DNA of 55,190 nt, counting the filler, from Bipalium vagum (Eukaryota): NCBI GenBank assembly GCA_037834085.1. It is 3 parts of 3 records of this genome, joined end to end, with 100 filler letters (N's around TTAATTAATTAA, not from the genome) between each part and the next. Parts side by side here need not be neighbours in the genome. Positions count along the whole stretch, not along the records: positions 1 to 23,931 come from JBBMKC010204710.1; 2 more parts are not named here. One strand, 5' to 3'. The first letter of the stretch is position 1. Every line of letters starts with the position of its first letter. Positions 3,101-23,931 of this stretch are shown here, in pieces. Both the position numbers and the translations under genes were made by a program. Under the pieces are notes generated by a model. It was not told where the DNA came from and did not search any database. It saw only the letters and a program-made list of their open reading frames with translations.

Positions 3101-4633
3101 ACTAGTGATCCAAGTGTGTGATTCTTTCATCGTCGGAGAATAAAACCATTGTAAAAATGAAAAATAGTTGTGGTGAAAATTTTTTTTTAAAATGTTCAAT
3201 TTCATCCCACACAAATTTATTTTTCATATTATTTTCGACGTAAGTATAAAATTTGTATGAAATAATATTTTTGAATATAAGAAAATAATAATTAATAAAT
3301 CAATAATTATTATTACAATAATAATAATAATAATAATAATAATAATTTTTAAACATAATTGAAATATTTTTTAAGAACCATTGATTTTTAAAATCCGCTA
3401 GGAAGTATTGAAGAAATCAAAAAAATCAATTAATTAAAATTTTTTTCAAACTTTCAATTATTTTCAACGAAATATTCCGATAATGGATAAATTTCTGAAA
3501 AAATATGTTTTACAAATGAAATAAATTGATTTTTATTTTAAATAAGGAATAAAAAATGATAGATTCAATTTAATCAATATGCAATCAATTCTGGCAATAA
3601 CTTATGTTAATAAACAACATTTTCAAATCATCAATTTCGATTTTAAAAATGAAAAGTATTAAATGAATAAAAATGTTTTTTAATAACAGTACTTTTCAAA
3701 ATCTCCTTGATTAGATAACAATAATCAATTTTGAAAGACTAGAAAAAGTATAAAAAGCGATTCTAAATAATAAATTTTCTAAAAAATCAATAAAAAAATA
3801 TTTAATTATAAATCGATTTTCCATAAATTTCAAAATTGATTATTGATATCCCATATAGAAACAAAATCGACTTAAAATTTAAAAATCGTTGAATAATTGA
3901 TTACACTATAAAATCAATATTTAATGATTCCACACAAAACATTCAGAAAATCAAATTGTGATACTGTTTAGAAAAAATTTTAAATGAACTCCAGATTCAT
4001 TTAGTTGAAAAAACTCAGACAGAAAATCAATAAACTAAGTGTTTTAATTATCCAATCAAAATCTTCTAATGGACCAATAATATTTCAGAGGGAAAAATCA
4101 AATTTGCTATGATTGAGTTACGTAATTTCTCATAAAATGACACATACAAAACGACATCAATATCGATTAAGAAACATCAACCTGTCATGGCGTTCATAAA
4201 TGTTGCCTGGCTTCGACTGAGCATTTTAAAAAACGGGTCCCGCACAGGAAACTTGGCTGAGCCACACAGAACTGTATGTTCAAGAATATGAGGCACTCCA
4301 GAGCTGTCAGGAGGCGGTGTTCGGAATTGGACGCTTGATCAAATAATGGAGTTCCACCGTTAAGCTAAATCATACCAATACTAAAACCACGTTACCCGAA
4401 TGTCTTGTTACGGTCTTGGCGATTCAAATGAATATGTTTGGCGTTGGTCTGTTCATGTATCATTTCCAGTGCTGTCATTCGGAATTCTGGTACGTCGATA
4501 TTCTAAATGATTTAATAAATATTATTTTCAATCAGGAACAACGTTTCGCTGACTATGATAAATTTACCTTGATTATTCGGTAACCTTTCAAAAGATTATC
4601 TACTTTGAAGTTGACCAGATGTCGATTTATCAT
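174..4633 (-). CDS. PITRM1: Presequence protease (pitrilysin metallopeptidase M16C), 5' part; 11 exons in the window, continues off the left edge
   Basis: Approximate exons: 4633-4568, 4502-4396, 4335-4182, 2117-2022, 1902-1768, 1707-1550, 1417-1292, 1170-1083, 988-742, 492-396, 308-174, all GT-AG and phase-consistent. The translation contains [50 protein letters not shown] (inverted zinc motif HxxEH), [30 protein letters not shown] and YHPSNSRFFTYGD, all diagnostic of PreP/Cym1. Confidence 0.95.
500..730. repeat. GA-rich low-complexity tract (pyrimidine-rich on the PITRM1 sense strand), intronic
   Basis: About 230 nt of mostly A/G on the + strand (gaaaggaaaggagaaatag...gagagaggaag). Confidence 0.8.
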
Positions 4634-5199
4634 CTGAAATATTGATCAAAATTTAATGAATTTGAAACTAAAATTTTCAAGTGTCACTTAAAATGCTTAA
4701 ATTTGAATTATGCCAAAATTTTTGAATAAATTTAAACACAAACTGCAAAACTTTTGTTTTTTTCGATTAGGAAATAATTTGATTATTAATTTCTTGATGA
4801 TATAATTTTAAATTACTTAATTTTTTTATTTAATTTACTCACAAATTAAGTAAAAGTATTTACAGTATAGTAGGAATATTTAAAATGTGTAAAATATTGC
4901 AAAATCTGTTTTAATTTATACTTTCTAAAAATTGTGATTTATAAATTAATAATTGAAAAAAAATTTAGCTTTTATTGGATTTTAATTTGGAATTAATTAT
5001 CTTTATTTTTAAGTGTTAATTTATTTAAAATCCTTAAACTTTTTAAAATCAAAATCAGAGTATCTAACTATAGCAAATCTGAAACATGAGTTAATAATCG
5101 ATGTTTTTTAAAAAATTTTAATTTAGCATTTCTTTTTACATGTTTATGCAGAAATATATATATATATTTCATAACAAATACACGAGTTGAAATGTACAC

Positions 5200-6626: not shown

Positions 6627-6774
6627 CACGGCTTTCAAAGATTTTTTTGAACTGTCAATAAAAAGTCTTCAATCTTCACTCCTTTAATTTTGCCAAAACA
6701 TGTAAGAAATTCATACAGATCATTTCCTTTTGCAAAATATTTCAAGTGCTGCTTTTCTCTATGTCTATATCATG

Positions 6775-7592
6775 AAAAGGTATTACAATTTGCTAACAAA
6801 ACCAGTGAAAATTTCTTCGGTAGAGCCATTCGAAAAAGTATACGTGGATATTTGTGGACCCTTAAAAGAAAAATTTTACAAAAAAGATATATCCTGGAAA
6901 CCAGAGACCTTTTTAGTTATTACATAGTAATTTTGGCTGTTACAAGACAAGATGATAATACAGTCGTCAAGATGTTCCGAAATAACTGGATCCTAAATTT
7001 TGGTGCTCCGAAAGAGATACATGCTGATTGCGGGAAATGTTTTGATTCCCAAGAATTTAAAAAGCTGGCAGTAAACATTGGAGCAGACTTGATCTTCTGT
7101 AGCCCGTACCATCATGATACAAACGGAGTTGTTTAACGAAAATTTCGTACCATTAGAGAGTATTTAAACGCAACTTTAAAAGATAGAAAGAAAACTGATT
7201 GGGCAGAAATGTTACCAGAAATCGACTATACTCTAAACGCATCTATACAGAAGACAACACGTATGAGTAAGGCGTAGCCAGTTTTTGGTCGGAGAATAAA
7301 TAGAGAAAGATGGTTCAGTAGGAATCAAATAGCCAGAAAGGAAACGATTGAGAAACTCAGATAAGAATCACGGGAGTTGGGAAATCAAGAAACCAGAAAG
7401 AACTTTACAGTCGGAGACGCAGTCTTGATTAGAAAAGAAGTTAGAACCAAAGATCAAGATAGATACGAGGGGCCATATGAAATTAAGAAGAAAATCCATG
7501 ACAGATGTTACGAAATTACAGATACGAACGGGAAGAAAGTAGTCAGTAACATTGAAGAGATCAAGAAATTCTTTAAAAAGAAATTTTCTTAA
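6775..7592 (+). mobile_element. Ty3/gypsy-type integrase pseudogene (catalytic core plus GPY/F C-terminus)
   Basis: PFEKVYVDICGPL, frameshift, then YILETRDLFS...WILNFGAPKEIHADCGKCFDSQEFKKL...SPYHHDTNGVV*RKFRTIREYL...DWAEMLPEIDYTLNASIQKTT, then FTVGDAVLIRK...RYEGPYEI. Contains stops and frameshifts. Confidence 0.92.
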
Positions 7593-9747: not shown

Positions 9748-10160
9748 AATTAAAGCTGAATGGTATCCTGTGTTTTAGGTCCATAATTACAATTTTCTTA
9801 ACTAATTTTAATTGTAAGTAGTGTTTTAGTATTAATTAGTATTTTAGTATTATGTGCATGATTCTGTATCTGTTAAAGTTTAAAAATTAATTTTAAATGA
9901 ATCAAACGAAATTTGTAAAAAATTTCAAACAAACTTTTTTCTGCCATATTTTAAAATTTATTTCAGAACAAAATTACAATGCTTACAATTACAAAAAAAT
10001 TTAAGTTAAATTTTAAACTAACAGAATCATTTAAAATTAATTTTTAAACTTTAACTGATACAGAACCATGCTCATAATACTAAAACTGTACTTACAATTA
10101 GAAGTAGTTAAAATTTGTTTTAAAATTAGGGACCTAAAATGCAGGATTACCAGCTTAATT
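9748..10160. mobile_element. Foldback/MITE-like element with ~140-155-bp inverted arms
   Basis: 9748-9903 (aagctg...atcctgtgttttaggtcc...gattctgtatctgttaaagtttaaaaattaattttaaatga) matches the reverse complement of 10024-10160, around a ~120-bp spacer. TTAA lies at both outer ends. Confidence 0.85.
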
Positions 10161-14100: not shown

Positions 14101-17100
14101 TCAAACAAATCGTACAATACTGTAAAACTATTTTCAAAAGAATTTTGCAATTTCAGATCCTTGCTATCAATTATTTGAGAAAACGTGACCAAAATGGTTC
14201 TATAACACCATGATATTTAACTAGAGAGTAACTAAATATTCTTCCGGGCATCTTTTATCTGCACATAATAGTTTTATAGTTGGATTTTTTTTAATAGTTT
14301 CACAGTTGAAATTGGTTTGAATATTCAGATCTATCGGGACTGAACATATTTGTATAGAAACTAACGAAGTTTGAATCAATCGATATTAATTCTTTCATTT
14401 TTCATTACAAGTAAACGAGAAACCAAAAACTGTATTAGATGGAAAGATGAGAGTAACTAAATATTCTTCCGGGAATCTTTTATCTGTTAACACCGTTCAC
14501 GGGACCAATTATTAAAATCGATAACTCTTCGCGGGCCATTGCTGATAAATATCGTGCCATTTATTTATGATTGTTCTCAGGTTATCTTGAAAATCACCTA
14601 CTGTGCGCCAACCAAAACCCTTTTTTTTATTTTTCCACTTCTTCTTTTCTTCATTTCATTTGTAACTTGTTCCTAGCGGCCCCTTGGTGTTTCATAATAA
14701 CCAGGACAATTATAAAACTTCCTAAAAGAAACTGTTTCTCTGCTGACCAGATTTAGTGAGTATTTCTTTTTTTAAGACCAGTGCACCAATAAAAATAAGT
14801 CCTCCTGGCGTATTTTAGAAGGCGTATTGTTTTAATAAAAACGGTATCACTTGCTTTTTACTATTCTCTCAAAACCAATAAATGTTTTCACTATCTTTTG
14901 GCAATCTAAATCTTTAATATCCTTGTTTTAATGTTTCATGCTCCCGATATTTTTATTATTTTAATGAAGTATTTCTGAAGAGCACTATGAACCAAGACAT
15001 CTGTTTAAGAATAGAGAAATTATATCGGTTGTCATCTCACGTCAATAAAACCAGAAATATTTATGGAAATTGATCAGTTGAGAAAGACAATTAATAAAGG
15101 CATAAGACAAGATTCCTTGTTTTTATTTAATAATTGTTTTATTTATTTTTATCTTTAAGCACTGATTGAAGAATGTTTAATCGATATATCAATATGCATA
15201 AAGACACAAAATTTGCTTTATTCAAATTAAAAGAACAATTACCAACAACTTAACTTCTGTCACAAACGGTGTCATATCTGAAATGATCTTTCACTGATTA
15301 CGTGGGTCGAAACGTTGCATAGAGTACGTCAAGGATTATGTCAAAAAGTTTGATGTTGGTCATTTTTTCGTTCTCAGTACAAAATCCAAGAACATTTTTA
15401 ATAAGATCAATTTATTGAAAGAGAGGAGCCACATTTTAAAAATTGGCTCAAATGGAATTATAATTCCCATATATCAATACATTTTATATTCATTTAGCTT
15501 ATAGTTAACTTGTAATGAAAAATAGAAAAAGTTAACACTGGTTTTTATATAATTTATCTTTTTCCTTTAACATTTTATGCAATTAATTATATATTAATAT
15601 ATGATGAATTATAAAAAGAATAAAAAAAATTATAAAAAAACAATAAATAATAATGACAAAAAAATATAATAATCAATAAAAATATTGGGATAATAATAAT
15701 AATATTCAATAAACAAAAAAATATAATGTTAATGATAATCAATAAATAAAAAAATATAATTATAATAATAATCAATAAACAAAAAATATAATAATCAATA
15801 TATAATAATAATAATATAAAATCATGAAGGAACCAATAGTGAGACATACCTGCACTTGATTGTAGGCTTCGATAATAATTGTGAGAATCAGATTGAGCAC
15901 AACAAAAATGAAAAGGAGGCAGAACAAATAGACAAAAAATTGAGAAAAAACAAATATAACAGGGTCGGCCTTGTCGGTAATTGAAAGAGTGACGTACATG
16001 TCGTCACCGTTCATTAACGAGAAAAGACAGGAGATCGAGCTGATAAGTGTTCGGAATTTGAGATGGTATGGACCGAGAATGATCCAACCCAAAAGGGAAA
16101 AGGCTAAATAGAGAATAGTGGAACACAGTGAAAATCGTAGCAGTGGTGGTGTTGCGGCTCGGATTGTGTTGATGAGAATCTAAACGAGAAAAACCATTGA
16201 AGAATTGAATTGAGTAAGTAAATACAAAAGACAACGGTGATCTTACACTGCTTTTGGGATAATAGCTGAAATACCGGATCAAAGCCAGATAGGCAAGGAA
16301 GACGCCGATTCCGAGAAAGTACGTGCAGCTTGAAAAGTTGGCAACCCCTTTCTTAGACTGTTGGACGGCAGAGCGAAAATAGAACTCAAAAATAATCAAT
16401 AAATATTTCTAACCACCATTGAATAAAGCTGTAGCTTGATAATTGTTCCACTAATGATAAACAGGTCTCCGAAAAAGAGGACCATGTAAGAAACCTTAAT
16501 AAAATGGCTTCGTTTGTCGGTGATATCTACTCCCATTTCAGTCAAAAAGAAATCTTTGGCTTCCTGAAACATGAAAGCATTGTCAACTCGGTTACGTCAC
16601 AGTTCCATTATATAACCATACCCTCCAAAATCTGTACAATTTCACCACAGAACGGCAACAAAGAACAAAAGATAAAATACTGAAACACAGAGACAAAATA
16701 TCAATCGATAAAATAAAGTTATTGATCGTGTATCCGACAGAATTATTCGGATCCAGATTTTTACAGGTTAGTTCCGTCATGTCGGAGTGCAGATCGACCA
16801 ACACTTGACCATTGTGCTTGGTGTTATCAAAATTGATCTGAAAGTATGAATGAAAAAATCGACCAGGATTATTTCAGTGATCAATTTGAAAAGGGTAACT
16901 TACAGATATATCGAATTGAAAACAATCGGGAATCTGATCCTTTTGAAATGACGTCAACAAAATCGTTCTTAAGCTAAACTGGATTTTGGCTTCTACTAAG
17001 CTGAAACGTAAATAGTCAATGAGAACCTTTTACACATTTCACGGAAGTTCACAGACAACGAACCCAGTTTTAGTACATTATCTATCGAACTATAAACTTC

Positions 17101-20100: not shown

Positions 20101-20748
20101 GGACGAGGCATTTTAGAAATATACAAAACGTACTTTTTCTGATTTTATTCGAAAAAGAATAAGTTGAGTTTGAGGGAGAAATGCTTTTGATTGGATAAAA
20201 AAAAACAGTCAAGTTCATCTGAGGGTTGTCGTCGTCTGTATATCCGTAAGCGCCGAGCGCATGATCCTTTAATTTATAATACTAAGCAAAACTCTGAACG
20301 TAAGTCAACTCGACAAGTACATGGACTCACAGTCTCCAATGCATGAGCAGAGAAGGTATAAAAATCGTGCACCTTATATATGGCGAACGGTCCAGTACTA
20401 GGCGGATAAGGTAATGTTTCGTAACTGGCATCCCATGTTGATAAAAATAGATGATTGAAAGACGTTTTCGATCCTTCAATGAACGAAACTTCGTTCGCAT
20501 TGTTATCACTGAACAGAATGAGCTAATAATGAAAATCATAAAATATTCAACGTCACAAGGAATATTTTCACCTGAGTAGTTAATATTATCAATTTAACGA
20601 TGATCAACACCAATTTGATGGGAAGTGTACCCTTTGCTTGCCATTTCTCTTTCGGATTCATAAAATGGTAGCGTAAACTCCGACGCATTCTCTCCTGCTC
20701 TTTCGTCAATCTCCTGTCGTTTTCATTAATATTCTCATTGACATGCAT
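11157..20748 (-). CDS. MCOLN: Mucolipin / TRPML lysosomal cation channel, 10 exons
   Basis: Approximate exons: 20748-20572, 20523-20331, 20282-20133, 18408-18306, 17000-16904, 16837-16622, 16563-16417, 16358-16248, 16179-15850, 11570-11157. Motifs: LRYHFMNPKEKWQAKGTLPIKL, YPPSTGPFAIY, IPDCFQFDISINFDNTKHNGQV, GWIILGPYHLKFRTL, pore CLFSLMNGDDMY, S6 LFIFVVLNLILTIIIEAY, and C-tail FINSCPESSKSPLYR...SFCCC. Confidence 0.94.
12130..13062 (+). mobile_element. Degenerate Tc1/mariner transposase with a probable right TIR, inside the last MCOLN intron
   Basis: SIQRILQDHLDFKS...PHVLT, NDEKWVYL (cf. TGDEKW), MHDNAPLH (cf. HDNARPH) and EPAHSLDLN (cf. PPYSPDLN). Ends gcgggaattttttgcgcactccccctaca-ta. Confidence 0.85.
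14224..14487. repeat. 38-bp direct repeat pair
   Basis: gagagtaactaaatattcttccggg(c/a)atcttttatctg at 14224-14261 and 14450-14487. Confidence 0.9.
15020..15140 (+). mobile_element. Short non-LTR (RTE/L2-like) reverse-transcriptase scrap
   Basis: INKGIRQDS-LFLFN resembles the RT motif GIRQGDSLSPLLFN. Confidence 0.35.
15285..15337 (+). ncRNA. Degenerate type I minimal hammerhead-ribozyme-like motif (Penelope-type)
   Basis: gatcttt-ca-CTGATTA-cgtgggtc-GAAACGTtgc-ataga-gtACGTC-aaggatt. It has a CUGAUGA-like box with one mismatch, GAAA, stem III ACGT/ACGT, a GUC triplet and stem I gatcttt/aaggatt. Stem II is poor. Confidence 0.35.
15590..15825. repeat. Degenerate AT-rich minisatellite (~30-bp units), start of the long last MCOLN intron
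   Basis: Repeated aataatcaataaa(c/t)aaaaaa(a)tataat units. They explain the spurious I/F/Y-rich ORF 15587-15847. Confidence 0.75.
17200..17545 (-). mobile_element. Possible highly decayed Helitron PIF1-helicase fragment
   Basis: YPIKSFLKILSQS...SVVIIRSI..LC...LQLN...ITI*SSNVDIGVFKK loosely follows Helitron YPxEFLNSL...MLIRNL..GLCNGTRL...PRIxL..S...FKR. The match is by eye only. Confidence 0.25.
18665..18890 (+). repeat. Two degenerate direct repeats resembling gypsy PPT/LTR junctions
   Basis: gactcggggcggt..ggtctg..taaaggagggggaTGTcagataaat versus gactcaggacggt..ggcctg..taaagaaagcggaTGTgagataaat: a polypurine tract followed by TGT in both copies. Confidence 0.5.
18899..18971 (+). tRNA. tRNA-Ala(AGC) pseudogene or tRNA-derived SINE head, antisense within an MCOLN intron
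   Basis: GGGGATGTAGCTCAG...AGAGCG...gAGCat...GGTTTGAATCCCGGTATCTCCA, 73 nt, with the Ala G3:U70 acceptor stem. D-loop, anticodon stem and B-box (TTT for TTC) are mutated. Confidence 0.75.
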
Positions 20749-21188
20749 GATTGGCTTCTTCAACTGTTTTGTTTATTATTTGATTAAGATTACCAACACC
20801 CGAATAGAATCAAAGCTCAGGAACATGAATAAATTTAATTTTATAAATATATGAAGGTCTTTATTTAGTATATTTAAACAAACTGTTTCAAAATATAAAA
20901 TTTAATAATATTTGTTTGAAATGAAACTGTTGTGTTACTTCATGTATTTCATTATTTATAATAATTTATAATTTAATTTTACATTTTAGTAAATCCGGAA
21001 TTCAAATAATTTACGATATTTTTCTTTACTTTATATTTCTTTCAATTGAAATTATATTTAATGATATATATCAGTTCATTAAAAATCAATAAGAATGTAA
21101 TATTAAATTTCATTGTAAGACAACATTTCTTTAAAATCTTAAAGTGTGATAATTACAGGAGATAAATATATTAAAACTAGATTCAGTT

Positions 21189-22400
21189 AATATATAAACT
21201 AGGAACCTGATATTTTCAGGGTCACCTTTTGTTTATATACATTAATTTTTGTAAGTTAAATTTTGCAAATTTTAATATTATTAGGAAAATTAATTTTTTT
21301 AGATTTAGAGAACAGAATAAGGTCCTTTTTAGGGCCCAAAATCATGATTGTTTAAAAAGAAAATGCTTTTTTTATAAAATCAGTCATATATTGACATTGC
21401 AATAATCATCTTACGTAGTTCTGCCTGATTTTGTCTCATTGGAATTCCGATAATCTTACAATGGAAAAATGTCAACGGAAAATAGTCAAATTGAATCCCG
21501 TGTTGCCCATTGATTCCGTTCTGCGAGGATTTTTGAGTTATGGCTTATATGGAATCAATCATTCTAAAAATGAAGCAGAAACGGAAATTATGCATAGCCT
21601 TGTAAAAAACCATGTCTATGAGCAGTTTACTTTGGTCGTACTATCATTTAAAAGATATAGCTTGTTAATGAAAAGTTTTGAAATGCTAAATGAACTTCCC
21701 TATCTTCATTCAATTGTGATCTTTTTGAATGATCAAAGTCTTCCGGAGATAGATTTCAAAATTACCCTAGTTATACATGGACATAAAAATGGTGAAAGTC
21801 GAACAGAATAGGCTGAATAACAGATATCTGTACTTAGACTGCAAGTGGTTTGTACTGTAATTGAGGTCGTAGAGGTTTTTGAAAGCCAAAGGTATGCCAT
21901 CATCAAGATTTTTAAATTTAATTTTAAAATACATAAATAATATGTTAATTTGAGTATTATTATATGAAATAGAATGTTAAATTAAGACAATTTAGATATT
22001 TCCATCAATATATGAATAGATTGGAGCTCGATTTCAATCCTAAGCAATTGATGTCGAAATAGAAAGTATTATTCCCGGCTTCCTTTTGGATCTCGTCGCT
22101 GATGTTCTGGAAATATTTAAGAAAAAATCTATTGTCGTTAAGTTTTTCAGATCAACTGAAGCGGTAAAGTTTAATAGACAAAATGATGATTATTGAAGTG
22201 ACCATATAAAACTGATTTTAAAAAAAAGCAATTTTTATAAAAATTCATGATTTTGGGCCCTAAAGAGAACCTTATTTTGTTTCCTTAATCTAAAAAAGTA
22301 ATTTTCGTAATAATATTAAAATTTACAAAATTTAACTTAAAATTAATTTATATAAACAAAAGGTGACCCTGAAAATATCAGGGACCTAGTTTATATATTT
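21189..22400. mobile_element. Non-autonomous TIR element (~220-bp TIRs) carrying captured gene fragments (Pack-type)
   Basis: 21189-21410 (tatataaactagg..cctgatattttcagggtcaccttttgtttatata...tagggcccaaaatcatga...caataatcatc) matches the reverse complement of 22186-22400. No transposase lies inside. Confidence 0.88.
21490..21835 (+). pseudogene. Exostosin (EXTL3-like) GT64-domain N-terminal fragment, frameshifted
   Basis: NPVLPIDS...EQFTLVVLSFKRYSLLMKSFEMLNELPYLHSIVIFLNDQSLP, then in a shifted frame VKVEQNRLNNRYL. Compare EXTL3 DPVLPSEA...[37 protein letters not shown]...VRTEKNSLNNRFL (recalled, not searched). Confidence 0.85.
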
Positions 22401-23350
22401 ACCATTTTCGACATTATCGATTAAAATTAACATTTATAAGTATAATATATTGGTTTAAAATATGTTTTAGAGATTTCTAAAAACACATTAAATTTAATTC
22501 AATGCCTTAGTAAAAAACAGTATAAGAACAAAAATATCTTGTTTTAATAAAACTTTGCTTCACTCAGCCAATATTTTATTCTTTATTATAATTATTTATC
22601 AGAATAATTCTTATTCGTCAATATTATTTTTAATATTAAACAAGTTAAAATATCACGAATTGTTGTTTAGGTCGGTTTAAATGCAATATTTATTTACAAA
22701 TATTTTATTCAAAATGTCAATTTAAAAAACTTAATCAAAAATCATTTAATTAGAACTATTCAATTATTTTAATAAGTGCATTTTCAATAAAATATAATTT
22801 AATATTTATAAAATTAATAAAAAGTTAATAACATTTATTTGATTTAAATTTAATATCTTTTAATTTAATATTTAATATTAATTAATTAATATTAAAATAT
22901 TTTAATATATACATTATATATAATATATAGAAATATTATTATAGAAATATATTATTAAATTCAAAATTTTCAAATTGATATAAAAAAGATTTAAATTAAA
23001 TTAGATATAAAATATTTGAATTAATAATTATTTTAATAATAATAATTGTTATTATTATTTTATTTAATTATTATTATTATTAAATTAATTATTATTATAA
23101 TTATTATTTATTTTTTTTAATTATTATTTTATTAATAATAATTTTAAAATATTTTAATATAGTAAAAAAATTATTGAAATATGTAGTATATTAATAAATT
23201 TAAAAACTTTAAATTTAAAATACTTCATTGAATTTTAATATAATTTTAATGAACCAATTAAATTATTTAAAAATAAAATTAATCAGAATACTTGCCACAT
23301 TAAATCGTTGATTTGGATATTTTCAAGCAAAAAGTATACAACCAATTAAG

Positions 23351-23931
23351 ATGCTTACCAATGACAATGTTGAATGTGCCATTTGTATAAAAGAGATGGT
23401 GGACCACGAAAAAGTTTTGCTTAAGGAATGCAATCACGGTTTTTGTAGATCGTGCTTGAATCTCTGGCTTCAAATCAATCCGACCTGTCCTCTGGACCGA
23501 AGCATTGTGACCCATGTTCTGCCATATTCTATTAAGAATAATAGCTTTGAACAAGTCTCAGTCGAACAGTTTATAGTCGATATCTCAGATGAAGATAAAG
23601 AGTCCATTTTATCAAATTATTTCAATGGACTCATAGAAAACCTGTCAAAATTCCTTGTCTCCTATGAAAAGTTTGCTTTGATAACAAAAAAGTTACGAAA
23701 CCTTTACGAAAAAATTGACGAGAGTGATTTTTTGATGTTCTTGACCTTTGATGGTCTATACCTAAGTGAGATGTGTCGAGTATATTTCATCAGGATAAGA
23801 ACTCTTTCAGAGCAATACCAAACTTGCTTTGCAGATTGTGAAGAACCAATCAATTCCAATATTCAAAGTTTGTCAGACAAGATCACAAGAATTAAGAGGG
23901 TGTTAGAAGATTACTCTTCCGATAATTCAAA
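23351..23931 (+). CDS. Intronless RING-finger protein (C3HC3D type, putative E3 ligase), 3' end lost in the gap
   Basis: CAIC-x14-CNHGFCRSC...WLQINPTCPLDR. The frame is open for 193 codons with no stop until the N run. Confidence 0.8.

What the first reader, a model, noticed from the sequence alone, without database searches (positions are those of the whole stretch)
21189..22400. Pack-type TIR element carrying a captured exostosin (EXTL3-like) gene fragment
Seen: two ~220-bp inverted repeats (21189-21410 and 22186-22400), both starting TATATAAACTAGG, enclose ~775 bp with no transposase. The insert holds a clear piece of an exostosin GT64 domain (EQFTLVVLSFKR...LNELPYL...RLNNRYL) with one frameshift and no flanking exons. 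Established: gene-fragment capture by non-autonomous TIR transposons (Pack-MULE, Pack-CACTA) is well known in plants and reported far less often in animals. Inference: this is a gene-capturing DNA-transposon family in an invertebrate. It sits only ~440 bp upstream of the MCOLN start codon, so it could affect that promoter, and its TIRs could fold into a long hairpin and yield small RNAs against the parent EXTL3 gene.
Basis: partly seen in the sequence, partly recalled or inferred. Interest (0 to 1): 0.8.

Follow-up and report, generated by a model that had tools for sequence, protein, structure and literature searches.

The report
Two decayed EXTL3-carrying transposon copies, tail-to-tail
The inverted repeat is real, but it is two broken copies of a roughly 225-copy non-autonomous DNA transposon lying tail to tail; the notable part is the family, every member of which derives from one capture of an intron-less piece of the host's EXTL3-like gene.

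Summary
Arms 21186-21410 and 22176-22403 are about 87% complementary, and an exostosin GT64 piece with a frameshift lies between them, about 440 bp upstream of the mucolipin start codon.

Each arm is the 5' part of a repeat family with about 225 intact 5' ends and 226 intact 3' ends in this 440-Mb genome. The family's real ends are 26-nt imperfect inverted repeats (GG...CC) flanked by 8-bp target duplications.

Family members are built as follows:
- a 165-nt transposon 5' part;
- a spliced copy of the single-copy EXTL3-like gene (contig C209341), running from about 18 nt before the ATG through exon 1 and exon 2 to the first 41 nt of exon 3, with both introns precisely missing;
- a 470-nt transposon 3' part.

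The inner 60-90 nt of each arm is itself EXTL3 sequence.

The window locus holds two members from different sublineages in convergent orientation. Both have lost their 3' ends. They are joined at a junction not found elsewhere in the genome, with no target duplication around the pair. It is therefore not a Pack element with 220-bp TIRs.

The family is a multicopy, cDNA-derived, Pack-type element in an animal. Its superfamily and its autonomous partner are unresolved.

The parts
21186..21350 (+). Left copy: transposon-specific 5' part (T5, unit positions 1-165), including the family's 5' terminus. The family consensus starts GGTTAAT; here the first G reads A at 21185.
   Evidence: 92% to the reference unit. 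The terminus motif occurs at 225 genomic sites.
21360..21528 (+). Left copy: three remnants of EXTL3-like exon 1. In exon-1 coordinates counted from C209341:3200 these are 19-71 (ATG and membrane-anchor region), 1106-1170 and 1679-1712.
   Evidence: 78-94% to C209341 exon 1. The same three pieces occur in most short copies.
21528..21787 (+). Left copy: complete exon 2 of the EXTL3-like gene (start of the GT64 domain), joined directly to exon 1 with the intron absent.
   Evidence: 85% to C209341:6897-7155. GT...AG boundaries are seen in the gene. Pfam GT64 match.
21789..21829 (+). Left copy: first 41 nt of exon 3, joined directly to exon 2 with the 2.7-kb intron absent.
   Evidence: 93% to C209341:9922-9962. 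The rest of exon 3 is single copy in the genome.
21830..21916 (+). Left copy: first 86 nt of the transposon-specific 3' part (T3). The copy is cut off here and lacks T3 87-469.
   Evidence: 91%.
21905..22020 (-). Right copy (reverse strand): T3 positions 280-395. The copy lacks its last 74 nt. A 12-nt AT-rich overlap (21905-21916) forms the junction with the left copy.
   Evidence: 90%. The junction was not found elsewhere in the genome.
22021..22168 (-). Right copy: exon-1 piece 895-1046 of the EXTL3-like gene. This segment is kept in the older, longer variants of the family.
   Evidence: 89% to the gene. 382 first-look candidates in the genome. The exon-1 side of the breakpoint with T3 recurs in C197440; the T3 side is too divergent to align.
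22165..22248 (-). Right copy: exon-1 start (positions 5-93: about 18 nt of 5' UTR, the ATG and the membrane anchor).
   Evidence: 78%.
22245..22402 (-). Right copy: transposon-specific 5' part (T5 1-162) with the 5' terminus.
   Evidence: 86%. Groups with older copies in the arm tree.
20539..20763 (-). Neighbour: N-terminal coding exon of the mucolipin (TRPML) gene, about 438 bp from the left end of the structure.
   Evidence: Matches human mucolipin-1 residues 36-84, E 9e-9. The pore exon at 15775-16092 matches at E 2e-19.
23351..23931 (+). Neighbour: a RING-finger gene transcribed divergently. The composite fills about 1.2 kb of the 2.6-kb space between the two genes.
   Evidence: zf-RING_2, E 2e-12.

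Best explanation
The locus holds two separate members of one non-autonomous cut-and-paste transposon family. They inserted in convergent (tail-to-tail) orientation between the mucolipin and RING-finger genes. A single deletion, joined at a 12-nt AT-rich overlap, most likely then removed both 3' ends and whatever lay between them. What remains is two 5' halves facing each other, which looks like one element with 220-bp TIRs.

The family itself is a chimera that arose once: transposon 5' part (165 nt), then a spliced cDNA copy of the host EXTL3-like gene, then transposon 3' part (470 nt). The cDNA runs from about 18 nt upstream of the ATG through exon 1 and exon 2 to nt 41 of exon 3, originally about 2 kb. 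The element is bounded by 26-nt imperfect TIRs and makes 8-bp target duplications. It then spread to about 225 copies while losing internal sequence, down to 77-bp miniatures that keep only the ends.

Shown: the anatomy, the intron loss, the single origin, the copy numbers, the TIR and TSD, and the different ancestry of the two arms. Inferred: the order of events at this locus; that a transposase supplied in trans moved the family; and that the gene piece entered through reverse-transcribed mRNA used as filler during repair, or through a retrocopy.
For: Family anatomy:
- Some 45 loci share the same junctions: exon 1 end to exon 2 start, exon 2 end to exon 3 start, and exon 3 nt 41 to T3 nt 1.
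- In the gene, these exon boundaries carry canonical GT...AG introns of 2.0 and 2.7 kb.
- The gene has a 565-codon first exon with a membrane anchor and an Exostosin_GT47 domain, and matches EXTL3 best. It also has a full GT64 domain in four exons.
- Gene parts outside the captured piece are single copy. Captured parts have hundreds of copies.

Ends:
- 225 sites match the 5' terminus and 226 match the 3' terminus; reversed-pattern controls give none.
- The termini form a 26-nt inverted repeat (17 of 26 positions) with a perfect 10-nt core.
- The 8-bp flanks match 8/8, 7/8, 7/8, 6/8 and 6/8 in 9 complete copies. Only 0.4% of control offsets reach 7 of 8.
- Derivatives of 77-476 bp keep both ends.

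This locus:
- The left half is unit 1-742. The right half is T5, then exon 1 positions 5-93, then exon 1 positions 895-1046, then T3 280-395.
- The left arm is 92% (median) identical to other copies, the right arm 86%, and the two arms 87% to each other. They are not sisters in the tree.
- The exon-1 side of the right half's internal breakpoint recurs in C197440.
- No other locus has the left/right junction.
- Flanks CTAGATTC and ATTTTCGA do not match.
- Other close pairs exist: C43475 has 3' ends tail to tail 48 nt apart, and C176084 has 5' ends facing each other 1.6 kb apart.
Against: - No reads could be laid, so a collapsed or chimeric assembly at the central junction is not excluded.
- Four of nine complete copies show no target duplication.
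- No autonomous partner was found, and no gene-free version of the transposon, so 'transposon-specific' for T5 and T3 is by exclusion.
- The deletion model is the most economical, but other rearrangements (ectopic recombination, aberrant transposition) would leave the same picture.
- Close pairs of copies are more frequent than random placement predicts. This hints at a process such as local hopping or insertion into kin, which I did not resolve.
Confidence: 0.72

Rival explanations
1. One reading: one Pack-type element with about 220-bp TIRs that captured the exostosin piece and transposed to this site as a unit.
For: The arms are long and 87% complementary. There is no transposase inside. 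A second locus (C176084) has two 5' ends facing each other 1.6 kb apart.
Against: In the other copies whose far end is in the fetched sequence, there is one arm and a different 3' end. 5' and 3' termini are equally numerous, 225 against 226. The arms come from different sublineages. The two halves carry different exon-1 remnants. The junction was not found elsewhere. There is no 8-bp duplication around the pair.
Confidence: 0.05
2. One copy became a foldback through strand switching during replication or gap repair, duplicating its own 5' half in inverted orientation.
For: There is a 12-nt overlap at the junction. Both arms share the rare variant CCTGATATTTTCAGGG.
Against: The arms would then be each other's closest relatives, but the left arm is 92-93% identical to many other copies and only 87% to the right arm. 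The right half also holds an exon-1 piece (895-1046) that the left half lacks.
Confidence: 0.06
3. Assembly artefact: two repeat copies were wrongly joined or collapsed in a very fragmented assembly (272,664 contigs).
For: The assembly is highly fragmented. The junction lies inside repeat sequence. The read check failed.
Against: The shared stretch at the junction is only 12 nt. Unique sequence and genes flank the structure on both sides in one 24-kb contig. One independent contig set holds 62% of the sampled words of 20600-23400, though that set may derive from the same sample.
Confidence: 0.1
4. The family is a retroposon (a LINE-dependent composite built on an mRNA) and not a DNA transposon.
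For: The gene piece is spliced, is in the sense orientation of the unit, and starts near the mRNA 5' end. AATAAA lies 3 nt from the 3' end. Some copies start 18-33 nt inside the 5' end.
Against: There are equal numbers of 5' and 3' termini. There is no A-tail. The duplication is a fixed 8 bp. The 5'-shortened copies have no duplication. The termini are inverted repeats, and miniatures keep both ends.
Confidence: 0.07

Closest known systems
Pack-TIR elements of animals (Tan et al. 2021, PMC8277862); Pack-MULE and Pack-CACTA of plants
   Same: A non-autonomous element with terminal inverted repeats and target duplications carries a host gene fragment. The parent gene lies elsewhere and is not flanked by the element.
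   Different: The captured piece here is intron-less and spans two exon junctions. That survey discarded intron-less captures as possible retrocopies, and found only 4 multicopy cases among 370. This family has about 225 copies.
Turmoil-1 of C. elegans (PMC2572040)
   Same: An animal DNA transposon whose long inverted terminal regions contain host coding sequence.
   Different: In Turmoil-1 the intron is retained, the gene pieces lie in true ITRs, and there are 8 fragments in the genome. Here the long 'ITRs' are an accident of two copies, and the introns are gone.
Composite and 'double' arrangements of cut-and-paste elements (for example double Ds of maize; from my own knowledge)
   Same: Two copies of one non-autonomous element lie in inverted orientation at one site.
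   Different: Here both copies are truncated at the inner side, and there is no sign that the pair moves or breaks chromosomes.
Processed pseudogenes / retrocopies
   Same: Precise loss of introns.
   Different: A retrocopy is normally complete at the 3' end with an A-tail and is made once per event. This piece is complete at the 5' end, cut inside exon 3, embedded between transposon ends, and copied about 225 times from one origin.

Membership tests
Pack-type TIR element (transduplicating non-autonomous DNA transposon) | Terminal inverted repeats at both ends of the mobile unit | tested here: met
   Met at family level: 26-nt imperfect TIR (17 of 26 positions, perfect 10-nt core, GG...CC ends). 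The 220-bp arms of the window are not the TIRs.
Pack-type TIR element (transduplicating non-autonomous DNA transposon) | Target-site duplication of fixed length | tested here: met
   8 bp. Scores of 8/8, 7/8 and 7/8 (and two of 6/8) in 9 complete copies, against 0.4% of control offsets. Absent around the window composite.
Pack-type TIR element (transduplicating non-autonomous DNA transposon) | Internal host gene fragment with an intact parent elsewhere that is not flanked by the element | tested here: met
   The parent is on C209341. No T5 or T3 sequence lies next to it. Its downstream exons are single copy.
Pack-type TIR element (transduplicating non-autonomous DNA transposon) | Capture of genomic DNA (introns retained), as in Pack-MULEs | tested here: not met
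   Both introns inside the captured span are precisely absent in all copies examined.
Pack-type TIR element (transduplicating non-autonomous DNA transposon) | An autonomous partner with the same termini | tested here: inconclusive
   hAT and MULE transposase genes exist in the genome, but none lies on a contig listed with the termini. No more genome sequence could be fetched.
hAT superfamily | 8-bp duplication; short TIRs beginning YARNG; hAT transposase | tested here: inconclusive
   The 8-bp duplication is met. The termini begin GGTTAAT, not YARNG. The transposase link was not established.
Mutator-like (MULE) superfamily | Duplication usually 9-10 bp; long TIRs; MULE transposase | tested here: inconclusive
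   The duplication is 8 bp and the TIR 26 nt. Termini that start with G are compatible. No partner was found.
Non-LTR retroposon / processed pseudogene | A-tail or simple-repeat tail, variable duplications, excess of 3' over 5' ends | tested here: not met
   No tail. Fixed 8-bp duplication. 225 5' ends against 226 3' ends.
Helitron | 5' TC, 3' CTRR preceded by a hairpin, insertion between A and T, no duplication | tested here: not met
   The ends are GG...CC with 8-bp duplications.
Exostosin-like 3 (parent gene) | Type II membrane anchor, GT47 exostosin domain and GT64 domain | tested here: met
   Exon 1 starts with a membrane anchor in its translation and has GT47 at E 2e-19. Best PDB match is EXTL3 at E 1e-28, against EXT2 at 3e-11. 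GT64 positions 1-245 lie in four exons.

The most novel reading that the evidence does not exclude
A cut-and-paste transposon of an animal took up reverse-transcribed, spliced host mRNA (the 5' 2 kb of EXTL3) and then amplified it to more than 200 copies. This would be a 'retro-Pack' element of a type that the only metazoan-wide survey filtered out by design. Inverted pairs such as this one could in addition act as hairpin loci giving small RNAs against the family and against the first 60-90 nt of the EXTL3 message.
Probability: 0.55. Interest if true: 0.6.

Novelty: new variant of a known kind. Interest (0 to 1): 0.45.

Why it matters
Gene-fragment capture by DNA transposons is well documented in plants and sparsely in animals. 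In animals nearly all known cases are single copy and retain their introns.

This family combines three things: an RNA-derived (spliced) host fragment, cut-and-paste style ends, and amplification to hundreds of copies. It bears on how capture happens, in particular whether cDNA or RNA can serve as filler in transposon gap repair. It also shows that pipelines which discard intron-less captures miss such families.

For genome annotation it is a practical warning. More than 30 loci in this genome score above the Pfam GT64 cut-off without being genes. An apparent long-TIR element can also be two truncated copies.

For the neighbouring mucolipin gene, 1.2 kb of its 2.6-kb upstream region is transposon-derived. 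Any effect of that on expression is untested.

Tried and rejected
Tools that gave nothing:
- The only run holding the locus is not on record as RNA (its kind is unrecorded) and is kept as contigs, so neither expression nor small RNAs could be tested.
- After no further genome sequence could be cut out. The second inverted pair (C176084), the tail-to-tail pair (C43475), the miniatures and the candidate transposase contigs were therefore seen only as coordinates.

Ideas considered and dropped:
- An apparent 500-nt non-canonical 'intron' inside the captured region turned out to be coding sequence of exon 1 that most copies have deleted.
- A Pfam hit that seemed to extend a copy on C218468 to GT64 position 123 was not borne out. 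The rest of exon 3 and exon 4 are single copy.
- Helitron, piggyBac (the TTAA in the terminus belongs to the element and is not a duplication) and LTR readings were rejected on the ends.
- The 3' part of the unit is not the 3' UTR of the gene, at least within the contig.
- Two literature searches found no report of an exostosin fragment in a transposon.
- The organism was not identified.

Full report
**1. The observation**

The repeat finder gives four collinear inverted pieces covering 21186-21410 against 22185-22402, 80-94% complementary. A genome search with the left arm finds the right arm at 87% identity. The 1218-nt stretch folds as one long hairpin, -387 kcal/mol. Between the arms there is no long ORF apart from 21431-21811 (126 codons), which contains EQFTLVVLSFKR...LNELPYL; RLNNRYL follows in another frame.

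On the window copy alone the Pfam GT64 match is weak (14.2 bits, E 0.028). Sister copies reach 38.5 bits, above the curated cut-off, and the DNA aligns to a real GT64 gene, so the homology is sound.

The mucolipin gene is on the minus strand. Its pore exon (15775-16092) matches mucolipin-1 at E 2e-19, and its N-terminal exon (20539-20763) matches residues 36-84 at E 9e-9. The first ATG is near 20748, about 438 bp from the left end. A RING-finger gene starts at 23351 on the plus strand. The structure therefore lies in a 2.6-kb divergent spacer.

**2. The arms are not the ends of one element**

The left arm has 257 first-look candidates in this 440-Mb, 272,664-contig genome, most at 90-93% identity. 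In eight loci re-fetched with up to 3 kb of sequence beyond the arm, similarity to the window runs from the outer tip of the arm through the exostosin piece to window position 21916. About 200-300 nt later comes the reverse complement of 21905-22020. No second inverted arm lies within the roughly 3 kb compared.

The typical unit is about 1125 bp and ends in a different sequence...TTTTTCAGGCACCTCAACTATAATAAATCC. The exostosin piece is therefore part of a repeat family, and the arm is the 5' part of that family.

**3. The family's real ends**

Units begin GGTTAATATATAAACTAGGTGCCTGA and end TCAGGCACCTCAACTATAATAAATCC. These form a 26-nt imperfect inverted repeat (17 of 26 positions) with a perfect 10-nt core and GG...CC tips.

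Pattern searches with up to 3 mismatches find 225 sites for the 5' terminus (69 perfect) and 226 for the 3' terminus (40 perfect). The reversed-pattern controls find none.

In nine complete copies, I compared the 8 nt before GG with the 8 nt after CC. They match 8/8 (CCGTTTTT), 7/8, 7/8, 6/8 and 6/8, and not in the remaining four. Only 0.4% of 3,591 control offsets reach 7 of 8.

Putting the two coordinate lists together shows members of 77, 135, 153, 390 and 476 bp that keep both ends (C105674, C135286, C211772, C208718, C110095), besides members of 1.0-1.9 kb.

Equal numbers of both ends, a fixed 8-bp duplication, inverted termini, and deletion derivatives that retain only the ends are the marks of a non-autonomous cut-and-paste DNA transposon. 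There is no A-tail, and the copies that start 18-33 nt inside the 5' end have no duplication. Both points argue against retroposition.

The superfamily stays open. An 8-bp duplication suits hAT, P, Merlin and some MULEs, but the termini do not start YARNG. hAT (195 candidates) and MULE (54) transposase sequences exist in the genome, and none is on a contig listed with the termini.

**4. What the family carries**

A Pfam GT64 search of the genome finds one full gene on contig C209341, with domain positions 1-57, 56-98, 98-194 and 191-245 in four exons. It also finds more than 30 loci that cover only positions 1-70; these are family members.

The gene's first coding exon is an ORF from 3197 (ATG at 3221) to a GT donor at 4916. 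It encodes a membrane anchor and an Exostosin_GT47 domain (E 2e-19), and its best solved relative is EXTL3 (E 1e-28, against 3e-11 for EXT2).

Aligning the unit to the gene gives:
- unit 349-616 = exon 2 (6897-7155, 84%);
- unit 616-656 = the first 41 nt of exon 3 (9922-9962, 93%);
- unit 237-310 and 320-348 = two pieces of exon 1;
- the inner end of the arm itself (unit 175-235) = gene 3218-3281, which is the ATG and the membrane anchor.

In the gene, the exon 1/2 and 2/3 boundaries have canonical GT...AG introns of 2.0 and 2.7 kb. In the unit the exons abut exactly (CTGCGAG|GATTTTCG and GGACATAAAA|ATGGTG).

Longer, older variants keep more of exon 1, collinear with the gene from about 3203 to 4380. 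Seven loci keep parts of the exon-1 middle that most copies have lost.

I mapped five reference segments onto about 45 loci: T5 (unit 1-165), exon 1, exon 2, exon 3 and T3 (unit 657-1125). All loci share the junctions exon 1 end|exon 2 start, exon 2 end|exon 3 start, and exon 3 nt 41|T3 nt 1. The rest of exon 3 and exon 4 occur once in the genome, in the gene. No T5 or T3 sequence lies next to the gene.

The family therefore descends from one chimera: T5, then spliced EXTL3 cDNA from about 18 nt before the ATG to exon 3 nt 41 (about 2 kb originally), then T3. The chimera was amplified afterwards and eroded by internal deletions.

In exon 2, copies are 86% (median) identical to the gene and 91.5% to each other. 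16 of 252 well-conserved columns differ between the family majority and the gene. Many copies carry stop codons, and I saw nothing suggesting that the fragment is kept as coding sequence.

**5. The window locus**

Mapped on the same five segments, the left half on the plus strand is:
- T5 1-165 (21186-21350);
- exon-1 pieces 19-71, 1106-1170 and 1679-1712 (21360-21528);
- exon 2 (21528-21787);
- exon 3 nt 1-41 (21789-21829);
- T3 1-86 (21830-21916).

The right half, read on the minus strand, is:
- T5 1-162 (22402-22245);
- exon 1 positions 5-93 (22248-22165);
- exon 1 positions 895-1046 (22168-22021);
- T3 280-395 (22020-21905).

These are two members in convergent orientation. Each lacks its 3' end, and they are joined with a 12-nt AT-rich overlap.

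They are not copies of each other:
- The left arm is 92% (median) identical to other copies, the right arm 86%, and the two are 87% to each other. In a tree of 29 arms the right arm groups with older, longer variants and the left arm with the young cluster.
- The halves carry different exon-1 remnants.
- The exon-1 side of the right half's exon 1|T3 breakpoint recurs in a copy on C197440. The T3 side is too divergent there to say it is the same junction.
- A search with 21860-22190 finds no other locus with the left/right junction.
- The 8-nt flanks of the pair (CTAGATTC on the left, ATTTTCGA on the right) do not match.

The simplest history is two insertions followed by one deletion that took both tails and the DNA between them.

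Close pairs are not rare in this family:
- two 3' ends tail to tail 48 nt apart on C43475;
- two 5' ends facing each other 1.6 kb apart on C176084;
- a head-to-tail junction on C204690.

By my rough estimate, random placement of a few hundred copies in 440 Mb would give well under one such pair. Local hopping or insertion into kin is therefore likely, but this was not resolved.

**6.

The position upstream of mucolipin is confirmed; any effect on the promoter is untested.

A transcript through the locus would fold into a long hairpin. The stem, however, is mostly transposon sequence. Only about 60-90 nt of each arm derives from EXTL3, at about 78% identity to the gene, and the GT64 piece lies in the loop. 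Small RNAs from it would mainly match the family, not the parent gene. No RNA data were available.

**7. Comparison with what is known**

Tan et al. 2021 (PMC8277862) found 370 Pack-TIRs in 100 animal genomes. Only four were multicopy, and the authors state that captures lacking the parent's introns were discarded to control for retrocopies. Turmoil-1 of C. elegans carries gene pieces in its ITRs with the intron retained, and has eight fragments.

The present family works like a Pack-type element, but differs in the RNA-derived nature of its cargo and in its copy number. I file it as a new variant of a known kind.

How the cDNA entered is inferred, not shown. Possible routes are cDNA or RNA used as filler in gap repair, capture from a since-lost retrocopy, or recombination between transcripts.

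**8. Limits**

- Genome sequence could not be fetched.
- The organism is unknown to me.

Noticed in passing
window 6690-7592 (+): Remnant of a retrotransposon integrase: an rve core domain (E 3e-10) at 6690-7133, and a weak Integrase_p58_C match (E 0.002, 18.5 bits, below Pfam's 27-bit cut-off) at 7377-7589. Observed only.
   Followed up: partly
G000:C43475:7550-7657: Two 3' termini of the same family lie tail to tail only 48 nt apart. This could be the kind of precursor arrangement from which the window composite arose by deletion. C36148 lists one perfect 3' terminus at the same coordinates (7550-7579, opposite strand) and may be a haplotype duplicate.
   Followed up: no
G000:C176084:419-2042: A second locus where two 5' termini of the family face each other, 1.6 kb apart.
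   Followed up: no
G000:C105674:6110-6186; also C135286:3189-3323 and C211772:132-284: Miniature members of 77, 135 and 153 bp that consist of little more than the two termini. These are MITE-like derivatives of the gene-carrying family.
   Followed up: partly
L017:1458-1643 (G000:C204690): A 45-nt 3' end of one unit abuts position 21 of the 5' part of the next unit, sharing CC. This is a head-to-tail junction with loss of the first 20 nt. Six of the roughly 32 loci holding a 5' part start 18-33 nt inside, without target duplications; the cause is unexplained.
   Followed up: partly
L039:8848-9246 (G000:C225432): This copy has an internal tandem duplication of the inner arm (T5 105-165 plus the exon-1 start appear twice).
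   Followed up: no
window 22963-23153: An extremely AT-rich stretch forms an 89-nt, 75% complementary inverted repeat and many low-complexity self-matches.
   Followed up: no
G000:C54836:1-285 and C118078:8-124: Further GT64 hits not related to the repeat family. The C54836 hit has no detectable similarity to the window ORF. Presumably these belong to other exostosin paralogues (EXT1/EXT2-like).
   Followed up: no
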